Part shown: positions 61,822 to 63,988 of the stretch, one piece after another
Numbering within the stretch: position 1 is the stretch's first letter
How the letters are laid out: each line of letters opens with the position of its first letter
Source of the DNA: Selaginella moellendorffii
Lineage: Eukaryota > Plantae > Lycopodiophyta
Assembly (NCBI RefSeq): GCF_000143415.4
Contig: NW_003314306.1
Span: 652,897-716,896, forward strand
Length of the DNA stretch: 64,000 nucleotides
Direction of reading: 5' to 3'
Position numbers and translations under genes: made by a program
The notes under the pieces: generated by a model
Told to the model about the DNA's origin: nothing
What the model saw: the letters and a program-made list of their open reading frames with translations, nothing else
The model's database searches: none

Positions 61822-62793
61822 CTAAATGGAGCGAGCTGCAAAGGCTAGAGCTCCAAGACCAATGGTGACCACAATGGTGGCTCCATACTTGGTGCCAGAG
61901 TCTGCCACATTTACGCAAGAATCGAGCATGGAGTATCCAGCCGAGTAGAGCTTGCTTCCAGCGATGTTGTAAAGAGCACGAACTGGAGCGAGCAGGGACT
62001 GGTATGCATATGGGAGGTATTCGCTTGCACCAAGGGCATCGAACAGAGAATCTAAGAACCATTCGCTGTGAACAGAGGCCACTACGTTATTGACAAGAAT
62101 TTCGCCTGACAGTGTCAAGGGGTTGTAGAGTCCCAGTTTGCCAACCTTTGAGATCTCTGCGTATATCAACATTGTGTTATTACAGAGCGTTAAGAGGTGT
62201 GGTTTCTTGTACCTGTGATTGGTGAGGCTCCAGAGATTGTGGACAGGCTATCGCCAACTTTGAGATCAGCAGCTCGCTTGTAAATTATCTCTCCTTTGGT
62301 GTTAACTGGGACAAAGTGACCGGCTGTAAGCTCCAAGGTGTTGGCTTCGGTCTTGACTTGCACGAATTCAGAGACAACATCTAGATCCTTGTGACCAAAT
62401 GCGTAGATATCCGAAAATGAATTCTTCCCAACAGCAACCTGTGGAAGCTCATTAATCATGTGAAGCAAAGTGGATTACTAGCTAGGATCTTGCCTTATCT
62501 CCAATCTTAAGTTCCTTCATGGTCTTCATTTCTCCACTGTACATATGAACCATTGCATCACCTAGATAGATATTGCATGGTTACATAGCACAGTGTAATT
62601 TCTAGAGAATAACTTTATTACCTGGAAAGCATCCAGTGTTGTTTTGACATATTCCATTGTTACATGTGAATCCAGTTAGCCCCGCTTGTGTGCAATCAGC
62701 AGTAGTATTGCACCTCACTATATTAGTAGCAAACACAGTGGAAAACAATCCAAGAAGAGAGACCACAGCAAACACAGCAGCTAGAGAAGCCAT
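61822..62793 (-). CDS. Secreted 4-Cys peptide + Hint/Hog autoprocessing domain + C-terminal hydrophobic anchor
   Basis: Exons 62793-62622, 62561-62494, 62438-62213 and 62156-61822 splice in frame: signal, peptide, G|CFPGDAMV...MKELKIGDKV, LELTAGHF, AADLKVGD, GLYNPLTLSGEILVNNVVASVHS, TM-like tail. Intron 2 is GC-AG. Confidence 0.92.
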
Positions 62794-63049
62794 TGTCTTT
62801 CAAATATACTTAAGGAGACACTAAGCATATGAAGAATCATTGGCCATGCACTGCTTAAATAGGATGAACTTAAACGTAATTACATGTGATATGATTTTCT
62901 GGGGAAGAATATGGGTGAGAACCTAAGTTACACCATTAACCATTCTGTTACAACATCTTTTAGTAGGTAATAATTCCTCTCCTAATTATTATTAATACTA
63001 TAATTAATTTTAATATTATTAGTGTTTAGTATATGTATTGGCTACCTAC

Positions 63050-63988
63050 ATGATTCCTAAGGCTATGGCTTCCTTGCTATTTTTCCTGCCTTTGATAAGT
63101 CTTGTTGAGTTCATTCCATGTGTGACTGCACAATCTGGAAAAGCATGTCTACCCATTCCAGACAACTGCACTGCTGGGTTCAAGTGCAGGAAAATCGTTG
63201 TTAATGGTATGAAAACCTTTGCTTGCATTGCAGATGGCTGCTTCCCAGGTAATGGAGTAGAAATTTGTAGTGTTTTTTAGCTCTATATTTTTAAGCAGGT
63301 GATGCTTTGGTACATCTGTATGATGGAGGATCAAGAGCCATGAAAGACCTCAAAATTGGGGACAAGGTTTTGTGTTTTAAAATGCCATGATTTTTTGTGT
63401 TGAAATTTGGTCCTTTGGGATTTCATAGGTTGCAGGGGGACCAGGAAGTGGCTACTCGGAAATATATGCGTTTGGACACAAGGAACTTGACGCTGCTCAT
63501 AAGTTTTTGCAAGTCAAAACTGATGAAATTGTTCTTGAGCTCACTGCTGGTCATTTCATCCCAGTTCAAGTCGAAGAGAAAGTGGTCTACAAGAGAGCTG
63601 CGGATCTTAAAGTCGATGATCGTCTATTCACAAGATTTGGAGTCTCGCAAGTTACAGGTGATCACTCTAGAACCACCATTTCATACCAGAAGTTCTTCTT
63701 TTCCTTGCATTATGTTTGTTTTCGGCAGAGCTTTCCGAGGTCGAGAAGCTGGGATTATATAATCCCTTGACACTCTCCGGTCACATTCTTGTCAATGACA
63801 TAGTGGCCTCCGTTCACAGCGAATGGTTTCTAGATTCGTTGTTCGACGCTCTCGGTGTAAGCCAGTATCTTCCAAGTTCTTACCAATTACTCCTCTCCCC
63901 AATTCGTGCTCTCTACAAGCTCGCTGGACGCGAGCTCTACTCGACTGGATATGCCATGCTCAATTCTTTCGTGAATGTGGACGAATAG
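63050..63988 (+). CDS. Secreted 4-Cys peptide + Hint/Hog autoprocessing domain (paralog lacking the hydrophobic tail)
   Basis: Exons 63050(or 63065)-63248, 63299-63366, 63429-63657 and 63729-63988 are in frame: G|CFPGDALV, MKDLKIGDKV, LELTAGHF, GLYNPLTLSGHILVNDIVASVHS. Intron positions are the same as in the paralog. Confidence 0.92.

What the first reader, a model, noticed from the sequence alone, without database searches (positions are those of the whole stretch)
61822..63988. Hedgehog-type self-cleaving precursors of tiny variable Cys-rich peptides in a plant
Seen: two paralogs, each with a signal peptide, a short four-Cys peptide and G|CFPG starting a complete Hint domain (Cys1, TxxH 'LTAGH', 'GLYNPLT..G..LVN.VAS'), followed by a helical region where the Hedgehog sterol-recognition region sits. 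The Hog parts are highly similar, but the peptides are very divergent: TNIVRCNTTADCTQAGLTGFTCNNGICQNNTG (32 aa) and QSGKACLPIPDNCTAGFKCRKIVVNGMKTFACIADG (36 aa). Known: Hog domains cleave at G|CF via a thioester and attach cholesterol to the N-terminal product, and Hog proteins have been noted in some non-animal eukaryotes including non-seed plants, so the domain itself is not new. Inference: this is a family of autoprocessed secreted peptides (signal or defence) whose C-terminal Gly receives a sterol or another nucleophile, or is cyclised. That would be a self-maturing RiPP-like system with a constant enzyme and a variable cargo.
Basis: partly seen in the sequence, partly recalled or inferred. 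Interest (0 to 1): 0.92.

Follow-up and report, generated by a model that had tools for sequence, protein, structure and literature searches.

The report
Spikemoss Hog genes with four-cysteine peptides
Two neighbouring, expressed and already annotated spikemoss (Selaginella moellendorffii) genes each join a tiny secreted four-cysteine peptide to a Hedgehog-type self-cleaving domain; the gene family has been known in this plant since 2008, but what it does, and whether it attaches a sterol, is still untested.

Summary
Two head-to-head four-exon genes lie at 61822-62793 (-) and 63065-63988 (+). My gene models match RefSeq XP_024541370.1 and XP_024541373.1 of Selaginella moellendorffii exactly. 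Each encodes a signal peptide, a 32- or 36-residue four-Cys peptide, Gly|Cys-Phe-Pro-Gly, a Hint module (Pfam 92.9 and 94.2 bits) and a conserved helical region.

- **Fold:** a model of a 96%-identical paralog matches Drosophila Hedgehog Hint (TM 0.85).
- **Splicing:** public assembled contigs join exon 1 to the Hint exons.
- **Novelty:** Hog proteins in this species were published in 2008, and both genes are annotated. Only the four-Cys cargo class seems undescribed.
- **Catalytic residues:** Cys1 and TxxH are present. Hedgehog's Asp46 is an invariant His, like the active engineered D46H enzyme. Cys143, required in animal Hedgehog, is Val.
the two peptides are diverged versions of one four-Cys scaffold. 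Gene B here has a 2-nt deletion that removes the C-terminal hydrophobic tail its allele keeps. Sister genes carry almost no cargo or Pro-rich cargo.

Self-cleavage is likely. Sterol attachment, cyclisation and a RiPP-like role are untested. This scan flagged other copies of the family elsewhere in this genome.

The parts
61822..62793 (-). Gene A. It has four exons (62793-62622, 62561-62494, 62438-62213, 62156-61822) and encodes 266 aa. It equals RefSeq XP_024541370.1, which is misnamed 'warthog protein 6'.
   Evidence: It is exactly identical to P0167. Hint scores 92.9 bits. Spliced contigs at very high depth cover it.
62728..62793 (-). Gene A signal peptide, codons 1-22. It has a hydrophobic core and ends ...V-F-A before Thr23.
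   Evidence: The sequence is. Kyte-Doolittle hydropathy exceeds 2 for residues 1-9. The -3/-1 rule was read from the sequence. No SignalP was available.
62632..62727 (-). Gene A cargo, a 32-residue four-Cys peptide (codons 23-54) that ends in Gly.
   Evidence: The sequence is. The AF2 model gives low confidence here (pLDDT 47-58). Against paralog L001 copy 3 it shows 5 nonsynonymous and 0 synonymous differences.
62622..62631 (-). Gene A Cys1-Phe-Pro-G, the predicted scissile Gly|Cys site. A phase-1 intron follows immediately.
   Evidence: The same intron position occurs in a short-cargo paralog (L003) and in gene B.
62056..62621 (-). Gene A Hint module (rest of exon 1 junction, exons 2-3 and the start of exon 4). 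It includes the invariant His at the Hedgehog Asp46 position and the LTAGH (TxxH) motif.
   Evidence: Pfam results are. Foldseek gives TM 0.85. Family invariants are listed.
61888..62055 (-). Gene A conserved helical region after the Hint fold, in the place of Hedgehog's sterol-recognition region. It begins with the invariant H-S-x-W-x-x-D.
   Evidence: The AF2 model has helices at 190-245 with pLDDT 81-93. The Atlas alignment to predicted Shh reaches residue 249-251. Against copy 3 there are 0 nonsynonymous and 4 synonymous changes.
61825..61893 (-). Gene A C-terminal hydrophobic tail. It could be a membrane anchor or a GPI-type signal.
   Evidence: A hydropathy peak lies at residues 246-250 onward. 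A hydrophobic tail is present across the family. Its role is inferred.
62794..63064 (.). A 271-bp AT-rich spacer between the two divergent start codons, presumed to be a shared promoter region.
   Evidence: GC is about 0.35. No contig depth falls at 62815-63057. Promoter function is inferred.
63065..63988 (+). Gene B. It has four exons (63065-63248, 63299-63366, 63429-63657, 63729-63988) and encodes 246 aa. It equals RefSeq XP_024541373.1, which is misnamed 'indian hedgehog B protein'.
   Evidence: It is identical to P0173. Hint scores 94.2 bits. All three introns are skipped in contigs of four runs.
63131..63238 (+). Gene B cargo, a 36-residue four-Cys peptide (codons 23-58) that ends in Gly. 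Cys1 is at 63239-63241.
   Evidence: Variants seen in other runs are 2 nonsynonymous (K26E, M49R) and 2 synonymous.
63984..63988 (+). Site of a 2-nt deletion relative to the allele. It creates the stop codon, so gene B here lacks the last 29 residues, including the hydrophobic tail.
   Evidence: The DNA alignment to L002 is. Contigs of runs X6 and X9 carry the two extra bases (table 4).

Best explanation
These are two members of the Selaginella moellendorffii Hog gene family. A Hog protein has a Hedgehog-type Hint domain followed by a conserved helical region and a hydrophobic tail.

Shown here:
- Each gene makes a spliced mRNA for a secretory precursor.
- The precursor has a signal peptide, a 32-36-residue four-Cys peptide ending in Gly, and then Cys-Phe-Pro-Gly opening a Hint fold.
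- The Hint fold carries Cys1, the TxxH motif, and an invariant His where Hedgehog has the general base Asp46.

Inferred:
- In the ER lumen, Cys1 attacks the Gly-Cys peptide bond (N-to-S acyl shift) to form a thioester.
- A nucleophile positioned by the helical region and activated by that His then resolves the thioester. This frees the small disulfide-rich peptide.
- The Hog part stays at the membrane by its tail.
- I rank a membrane 3-beta-hydroxysterol as the most likely nucleophile (about 0.35). That would give a sterol-esterified peptide. Water is next, giving plain self-cleavage.

The confidence value refers to 'self-cleaving Hog precursor of a small secreted Cys-rich peptide', not to the sterol step.
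For: - **Gene models and identity.** My gene models equal RefSeq proteins of S. moellendorffii exactly.
- **Domain and fold.** Hint PF01079 scores 92.9 and 94.2 bits. The AF2 model of the 96%-identical paralog P0151 has pLDDT 88-98 over residues 51-240. Its best PDB matches are Hedgehog Hint 6TYY and 1AT0 (TM 0.85, rmsd 2.3).
- **Catalytic residues.** In the residue alignment, Cys1, T/H of LTAGH and His95 fall on C1, T69/H72 and position 46 of Hedgehog. His95, His120 and the motif H184-S185-x-W187-x-x-D190 are invariant. CFPG is kept in nearly all of 30 diverse relatives. This points to retained catalysis.
- **His as general base.** The engineered D46H (D303H) Hedgehog enzyme keeps its activity and accepts more sterols (PMC9163320).
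- **Helical region.** ESM Atlas alignments to predicted Sonic hedgehog cover query residues 5-249, so the helical region overlays the SRR.
- **Expression.** Spliced contigs join exon 1 to the Hint exons.
- **Membrane topology.** The protein has an N-terminal signal-like segment and a C-terminal hydrophobic segment.
- **Cargo turnover.** All small-cargo Selaginella genes form one clade (support 100/99) with a conserved Hog and a changing exon 1.
Against: - No cleavage, thioester or adduct has been shown for any plant Hog protein. I found no such paper.
- The residue aligned with Hedgehog Cys143 is Val, and it varies (V/A/T/S/C/P) across the family. In Sonic hedgehog, C143A and C143D abolish autoprocessing (PMC12054796).
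- The Pfam match stops at profile position 163 of 213, so the SRR part is not matched by sequence. The phmmer match in that region is only 10.4 bits.
- Sister genes have cargo of only about 5 residues. In those genes the released piece can hardly be the functional product.
- Gene B in this window lacks the tail.
Confidence: 0.7

Rival explanations
1. The precursor self-cleaves by plain hydrolysis. The Hint domain acts only as a built-in propeptide protease. It releases a free, unmodified Cys-rich peptide (or a tiny stub in the short-cargo genes), and no lipid or other adduct forms.
For: Cys143 is missing. In Hedgehog this residue forms the branched intermediate (PMC12054796). The SRR is not matched by sequence. 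Thioesters at Hint domains are known to be resolved by water or small nucleophiles as a side reaction, which is established intein and Hedgehog chemistry.
Against: The helical region after the Hint fold is the most conserved part of the protein. It shows 0 nonsynonymous against 4 synonymous changes and has several invariant residues. That is hard to explain if the region has no substrate-handling role. The His at position 46 is also invariant.
Confidence: 0.25
2. The functional product is the membrane-tethered Hog part itself, for example a sterol-binding or acyl-transfer protein activated by exposing Cys1. The N-terminal peptide would be a dispensable pro-piece that drifts freely.
For: Sister genes have only about 5 residues, or none, between signal peptide and Cys1. 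Cargo shows relaxed or fast evolution (5 nonsynonymous against 0 synonymous) while the Hint and helical parts are constrained. The helical region and tail are conserved across mosses, liverworts and lycophytes.
Against: All four Cys positions and the framework are retained between genes A and B despite long divergence. Other relatives carry recognisable functional cargo, such as a hevein-type chitin-binding domain (36.4 bits). Gene B without its tail is still transcribed.
Confidence: 0.12
3. The thioester is passed to another acceptor, such as a lysine of a protein or a hydroxyl or amine of a wall polymer. The cargo then becomes covalently fixed, as in the Tetrahymena BUBL system, where a Hint-like BIL domain ligates its N-terminal flank.
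For: BIL2 of the Tetrahymena BUBL locus is the third-best structural match (6Y75, E 5e-9). Pro-rich, wall-protein-like cargo occurs in sister genes.
Against: Sequence and structure are clearly closer to Hedgehog HhC than to BIL. No acceptor is evident.
Confidence: 0.06
4. The thioester is attacked by the peptide's own N-terminal amine, giving a head-to-tail cyclic peptide.
For: The only support is chemical feasibility, known from engineered intein cyclisation.
Against: After signal cleavage the peptides start with Thr or Gln, not Cys. Cargo lengths in the clade range from about 5 to about 75 residues and include Pro-rich tracts. Nothing in the sequence points to cyclisation.
Confidence: 0.02

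Closest known systems
Hedgehog C-terminal autoprocessing domain (HhC/Hog; Drosophila Hh, PDB 1AT0 and 6TYY; vertebrate Shh)
   Same: Both have the Hint fold (TM 0.85) and Gly|Cys-Phe at the junction. Cys1 and TxxH align. A helical region follows the Hint fold and overlays the SRR of predicted Shh models. Both are secretory precursors.
   Different: The N-terminal Hedge signalling domain is absent (no PF01085). Asp46 is His, the natural counterpart of the engineered D46H. Cys143 is Val. The helical region has its own invariant H-S-x-W-x-x-D motif and only faint sequence similarity to the SRR. A hydrophobic C-terminal tail is added. No sterol transfer has been shown.
Plant Hog proteins of Buerglin 2008 (pSm Hog of S. 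moellendorffii, pSl Hog of S. lepidophylla, pPp Hog of Physcomitrella; PMC2362128)
   Same: They belong to the same family and, for pSm Hog, the same species. The Hog domain has the same motifs, signal peptide and C-terminal tail. pSm Hog is the short-cargo sister type, which falls in the same Selaginella clade.
   Different: The published pSm Hog has only about 4-5 residues between signal peptide and Cys1. pSl and pPp carry a roughly 215-residue conserved N-domain. The four-Cys mini-peptide cargo of genes A and B is not described there.
Nematode Hedgehog-related proteins (warthog, groundhog, quahog)
   Same: They share the architecture of signal peptide, lineage-specific Cys-containing N-domain and Hog domain. 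They are also an expanded, tandemly duplicated family. RefSeq borrowed their names for these genes.
   Different: The N-terminal part here is only 32-36 residues long and matches no Pfam domain above its cut-off. The names 'warthog protein 6' and 'indian hedgehog B' are best-hit misnomers.
GmGIN1 of Glomus/Mucoromycota (AIG1 GTPase + Hog)
   Same: It is a non-animal Hog domain, and it is structurally similar over 191 residues (Atlas row 4).
   Different: It has a cytosolic GTPase cargo and, per PMC2362128, no signal peptide.
Small secreted plant Cys-rich peptides (e.g. nodule NCR peptides, Pfam Nodulin_late)
   Same: Both have a signal peptide followed by a four-Cys peptide of about 30-40 residues with variable loops.
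   Different: The match is below threshold (20.1-24.7 bits against a 30.4 cut-off). Known Cys-rich peptides are released by signal peptidase or subtilases, not by a fused Hint domain.

Membership tests
Hint module (Pfam PF01079) | Profile score above the gathering cut-off (29.7 bits) | tested here: met
   Gene A protein P0167 scores 92.9 bits and gene B protein P0173 scores 94.2 bits. Single exons also hit on their own.
Hint module (Pfam PF01079) | Hint beta-fold | tested here: met
   The AF2 model of P0151 (96% identical to gene A) has pLDDT 88-98 over the domain. Foldseek top hits are 6TYY and 1AT0, with TM 0.85 and rmsd 2.3-2.4 over 145-146 columns.
Hog domain (Hedgehog-type autoprocessing domain) | Catalytic Cys1 directly after a small residue (Gly), in the G|CF junction | tested here: met
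   G|CFPG is present in both genes. CFPG is kept in nearly all full-length relatives.
Hog domain (Hedgehog-type autoprocessing domain) | TxxH motif (T69/H72) | tested here: met
   LTAGH aligns with TPAH of Drosophila Hh. The His is nearly invariant in the family.
Hog domain (Hedgehog-type autoprocessing domain) | General base Asp46 (D303) | tested here: not met
   The aligned residue is His, invariant in 30 relatives. The engineered D46H enzyme is active (PMC9163320), so the role may be kept by a different residue.
Hog domain (Hedgehog-type autoprocessing domain) | Cys143 of the SCYA motif (branched-intermediate thioester) | tested here: not met
   The aligned residue is Val in genes A and B and varies in the family. 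In Shh, C143A and C143D block processing (PMC12054796).
Hog domain (Hedgehog-type autoprocessing domain) | Sterol-recognition region after the Hint fold | tested here: inconclusive
   A confident helical region follows the Hint fold. It overlays predicted Shh up to residue 249-251. Sequence similarity is only 10.4 bits, and Pfam coverage ends at profile position 163 of 213. No solved SRR structure exists to compare with.
Hog domain (Hedgehog-type autoprocessing domain) | Self-cleavage at Gly|Cys and transfer of the N-terminal product to a sterol | not testable with these tools
   This needs biochemistry. No paper on plant Hog processing was found.
Hedgehog proteins proper | N-terminal Hedge signalling domain (PF01085) | tested here: not met
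   No such hit was found. The N-terminal product is only 32-36 residues.
Nematode warthog proteins (the name given by RefSeq) | Wart N-terminal domain | tested here: not met
   The N-terminal part is a 32-residue four-Cys peptide with no Pfam domain above its cut-off. The name comes from similarity of the Hog part only.
Inteins | C-extein and a terminal His-Asn plus a downstream nucleophile for splicing | tested here: not met
   The protein ends after the helical region and tail, so there is no C-extein and no HN motif. Inteins rank below Hedgehog in the fold search.
Nodule-specific Cys-rich peptides (Pfam Nodulin_late) | Profile score above the gathering cut-off (30.4 bits) | tested here: not met
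   Scores are 24.7 bits for exon 1 alone and 20.1 bits for the whole protein.
   No product data are available. This is a label, not a defined family with sequence criteria.

The most novel reading that the evidence does not exclude
Plant Hog domains use their natural His general base and conserved helical region to esterify the C-terminal Gly of tiny secreted cargo to phytosterols. The cargo would include four-Cys peptides, about 5-residue glycopeptide stubs and Pro-rich glycomodules. This would be protein and peptide sterylation outside animals, and it would work without Cys143. It would create a class of sterol-anchored extracellular peptides in non-seed plants, with exon 1 acting as an exchangeable cargo cassette.
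Probability: 0.22. Interest if true: 0.85.

Novelty: new member of a known kind. Interest (0 to 1): 0.42.

Why it matters
Covalent sterol attachment to a protein is so far known only for animal Hedgehog ligands. Non-animal Hog proteins have been catalogued since 2008, but none has been tested in the papers I could search.

These Selaginella genes are convenient test cases for three reasons:
- They are short precursors, 246-266 residues long.
- Their cargo is small enough for direct mass spectrometry.
- They carry a natural His at the general-base position and lack Cys143.

Showing whether they cleave, and onto what, would answer two questions. The first is whether sterylation predates animals. 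The second is whether the Cys143 branched intermediate is a Hedgehog-specific addition.

As a sequence finding, however, this is an annotated member of a published family.

Tried and rejected
- **Spliced proteins as references.** Spliced proteins have no reference form, so I first scanned single exons against Pfam. Hits were piecewise and mostly below the cut-off. I then recovered exact database copies, P0167 and P0173, via a representative search with exon 4 of gene A and a cluster look-up.
- **Search for the cargo elsewhere.** Residues 1-58 of gene A, searched among proteins of similar total length, found only its own Selaginella cluster. Exon 1 alone, searched among proteins of 31-100 residues, found no candidates. 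This search needs shared 5-residue words, so a blank is weak evidence.
- **Nodulin_late resemblance.** It is below threshold and was rejected as membership.
- **Locus look-ups.** The look-up of encoding contigs had no record for P0003, P0002 or P0159. I therefore could not check the intron position in the Pro-rich and large-N genes.
- **Diversifying selection on cargo.** For gene A against its paralogs, cargo shows 5 nonsynonymous and 0 synonymous changes, against 3 and 8 in the Hint plus helical parts. My hand calculation of a one-sided Fisher test gives about 0.013. The counts are tiny. Gene B cargo variants are 2 nonsynonymous and 2 synonymous. The result is suggestive for gene A only, and I do not claim positive selection.
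- **Contamination by an animal.** I rejected this. The genes lie between plant PPR and F-box genes. They have the short introns of this genome. Paralogs on other scaffolds have the same neighbours.
- No SignalP or GPI predictor was available. The signal peptide and tail rest on hydropathy and on reading the sequence.
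Full report
**What is there.** The stretch holds two divergently transcribed genes separated by a 271-bp AT-rich spacer.
- Gene A lies on the minus strand. Its exons are 62793-62622, 62561-62494, 62438-62213 and 62156-61822. 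The introns are 60, 55 and 56 nt, and the middle one is GC-AG. It encodes 266 residues.
- Gene B lies on the plus strand. Its exons are 63065-63248, 63299-63366, 63429-63657 and 63729-63988. The GT-AG introns are 50, 62 and 71 nt. It encodes 246 residues.
- Both proteins start with a hydrophobic signal-like segment ending V-x-A.
- A four-Cys peptide follows, 32 residues in A and 36 in B, ending in Gly.
- Identity between A and B is 19/49 before CFPG and 125/187 after it.

**Identity of the genome and the genes.** A representative search with exon 4 of gene A gave 449 relatives at E of 0.001 or better. Follow-up searches name the source as Selaginella moellendorffii.
- My two models equal XP_024541370.1 ('warthog protein 6') and XP_024541373.1 ('indian hedgehog B protein') residue for residue. 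Both lie on one 1.5-Mb scaffold.
- The gene structure, including exon 1, is therefore already in RefSeq.
- The names are best-hit misnomers. There is no Hedge domain, and no Pfam domain above its cut-off in the 32-36-residue N-terminal part.
- The older models of the first annotation (SELMODRAFT_420222 and 420223) skip the cargo and even Cys1.

**Transcripts.** Assembled contigs of four public runs from four studies were laid on 61600-64000.
- For gene B, single contigs skip all three introns at exactly my coordinates. One 721-nt contig does so without a mismatch.
- For gene A, contigs join exons 1, 2 and 3, and one contig skips intron 3. The contig depths are far higher than for gene B.
- Many gene A contigs carry variants that match paralogs on another scaffold. 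Depth is therefore a family signal, not a measure for this copy.
They do join.

**Domain and fold.**
- Hint PF01079 scores 92.9 bits for A and 94.2 bits for B, against a cut-off of 29.7. The match covers profile positions 8-163 of 213.
- An AlphaFold2 model of P0151, a 96%-identical paralog, was built with a 30-sequence alignment. It has pLDDT 88-98 over residues 51-240. The cargo is poorly modelled.
- Foldseek ranks Drosophila Hedgehog Hint first (6TYY and 1AT0, TM 0.85, rmsd 2.3-2.4). BIL domains and inteins rank lower.
- In the ESM Atlas the best matches are predicted full-length Sonic hedgehog models. They align over 212-219 residues up to query residue 249-251. The helices after the Hint fold therefore overlay the sterol-recognition region of those models. 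Both sides of that comparison are predictions.

**Catalytic residues.** The residue alignment to Hedgehog gives the following, in P0151 numbering (add 1 for gene A).
- Cys54 falls on C1.
- Thr117 and His120 fall on T69 and H72.
- His95 falls on position 46.
- Val183 falls on Cys143.
- His95 is invariant in the 30 aligned relatives from lycophytes, mosses, a liverwort and unnamed environmental sequences. So are His184, Ser185, Trp187 and Asp190 at the start of the helical region.
- The engineered D46H (D303H) Drosophila enzyme keeps structure and activity and accepts more sterols (PMC9163320). Its structure, 6TYY, is the top hit here.
- Cys143, by contrast, is reported as absolutely required in Sonic hedgehog, where it forms a branched thioester (PMC12054796). 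In this family the position varies.
- Either these proteins resolve the Cys1 thioester directly, or another residue takes over. The invariant Ser two positions later is a speculative candidate. This is the main reason not to assume Hedgehog-like chemistry in full.

**What was already known.** Buerglin (2008, PMC2362128) reported Hog proteins in S. moellendorffii, S. lepidophylla and Physcomitrella.
- His supplementary table shows that pSm Hog is the short-cargo type, with about four or five residues between signal peptide and Cys1.
- pSl and pPp carry a large conserved N-domain.
- The four-Cys cargo type is not in that paper. Four further full-text searches found no later work on plant Hog proteins.
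- Other agents of this scan have followed up other copies of the family in this genome and reached the same conclusion, 'known family'.

**The family in Selaginella.** Database proteins fall into cargo classes:
- none or about 5 residues;
- Pro-rich tracts of 50-75 residues;
- the four-Cys peptides of A and B;
- a roughly 215-residue domain shared with bryophytes.

A maximum-likelihood tree of the Hog parts gives this picture.
- All small-cargo Selaginella genes fall in one clade (support 100/99). This clade is apart from the large-N gene, which sits with the moss, liverwort and Diphasiastrum proteins.
- Inside that clade, A plus B (99/96) are sister to the short plus Pro-rich genes (95/92).
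- The root was a midpoint, used for drawing only. Fragmentary proteins and most environmental representatives were left out.
- A and B share the framework C-x4-D-(x)-C-T...G-F-x-C...C. They therefore descend from one four-Cys ancestor.

The intron that follows CFPG in phase 1 is at the same place in A, in B and in a short-cargo gene. Exon 1 thus equals signal peptide plus cargo plus cleavage site. 'Constant enzyme, variable cargo' is a fair description of the clade. The near-empty cargo genes show that peptide delivery is not the whole story.

Elsewhere, relatives carry larger cargo. One unnamed sequence has a hevein-type chitin-binding domain (36.4 bits).

**Rates.** Three tandem A-type copies lie on scaffold GL377597.1 (L001). 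Compared with copy 3, gene A shows the following.
- Cargo: 5 nonsynonymous and 0 synonymous differences, plus a 3-nt indel. All Cys are kept.
- Hint plus helical parts: 3 nonsynonymous and 8 synonymous differences.
- Helical region alone: 0 nonsynonymous and 4 synonymous differences.
- These counts are too small for a firm claim. They agree with fast or relaxed cargo evolution and a constrained Hog part.
- Gene B cargo variants in other runs are 2 nonsynonymous and 2 synonymous.

**Corrections about gene B.** The allele or duplicate locus on GL377634.1 (L002) encodes 275-280 residues with a C-terminal hydrophobic tail like that of gene A.
- The window copy lacks two bases at 63984/63985, which creates the stop.
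- Contigs of two runs carry the two bases.
- Gene B here is thus a truncated, still transcribed allele without the presumed membrane anchor.
- At L002 the roughly 1.69 kb that hold gene A and the end of the PPR gene are absent.

**Mechanism, with what is shown and what is inferred.**
- Shown: a secretory-type precursor architecture, a Hint fold with Cys1, TxxH and His, a conserved helical region and tail, and spliced transcripts.
- Inferred from Hedgehog and intein chemistry: an N-to-S acyl shift at Gly|Cys, and resolution of the thioester by a nucleophile.
- I put self-cleavage at about 0.75.
- For the nucleophile I put a sterol at about 0.35, water at about 0.25-0.3, another acceptor at under 0.1, and cyclisation at about 0.02.
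- A role of the peptides in signalling or defence has no evidence beyond their form.

**Verdict.** The finding is a pair of annotated members of a family published for this species in 2008. The undescribed aspect is a four-Cys mini-cargo class inside a Selaginella-specific expansion with exchangeable first exons. The interest lies in the open biochemical question, not in the sequence discovery.

Noticed in passing
window 61271-62957 versus L002 about 9900-9930: A related locus on scaffold GL377634.1 has the same PPR gene followed directly by gene B. The roughly 1.69 kb holding the PPR 3' end and all of gene A are absent there. The junction reads ...GATAAGAT|TTTAGTAGG, with only 1-2 nt of microhomology. 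Gene A therefore shows presence/absence between haplotypes or duplicated loci.
   Followed up: partly
L001 2566-3534, about 8020-8990 and 10001-10969 (GL377597.1): Three tandem A-type Hog genes lie here, each next to PPR gene pieces, with thioredoxin nearby as in L002. The middle copy is annotated as 206 aa starting inside exon 2. An intact exon 1 with its own cargo variant lies just upstream, so its annotation is probably too short.
   Followed up: partly
window 62439-62493: Intron 2 of gene A is a GC-AG intron (donor AAG|GCAAGA). Contigs confirm that it is spliced.
   Followed up: yes
P0019 (309 aa, from a 982-nt Logan contig, organism unknown): This Hog protein has a hevein-type chitin-binding domain as cargo (Chitin_bind_1, 36.4 bits), placed directly before Ser|Cys-Phe-Pro-Gly. 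It is a defence-type cargo on the same kind of Hog domain.
   Followed up: no
P0168, P0171, P0158, P0174 (first-annotation Selaginella models): These older gene models splice from the signal peptide straight into exon 3, or drop the cargo. They therefore lack Cys1. They look like mis-predictions rather than real isoforms. No contig supporting them was seen.
   Followed up: partly
window 58902-61404 (+), with an N gap at 60485-60654: A long PPR-repeat gene is interrupted by an assembly gap and ends tail-to-tail with gene A. An F-box/beta-propeller gene lies at 56618-57547. A second N gap is at 45814-45913.
   Followed up: partly
L003 6001-6874 and 11101 to about 11982 (GL377687.1): Short-cargo Hog genes also occur as tandem duplicates, with the same intron right after CFPG.
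   Followed up: partly
gene A cargo, window 62632-62727: The cargo of gene A has two N-x-T sequons (N-T-T and N-N-T). Both are lost in the paralogs on L001 (T-T-T and N-P). The about 5-residue cargo of the short genes also holds a sequon. The N-terminal products may be N-glycosylated.
   Followed up: no
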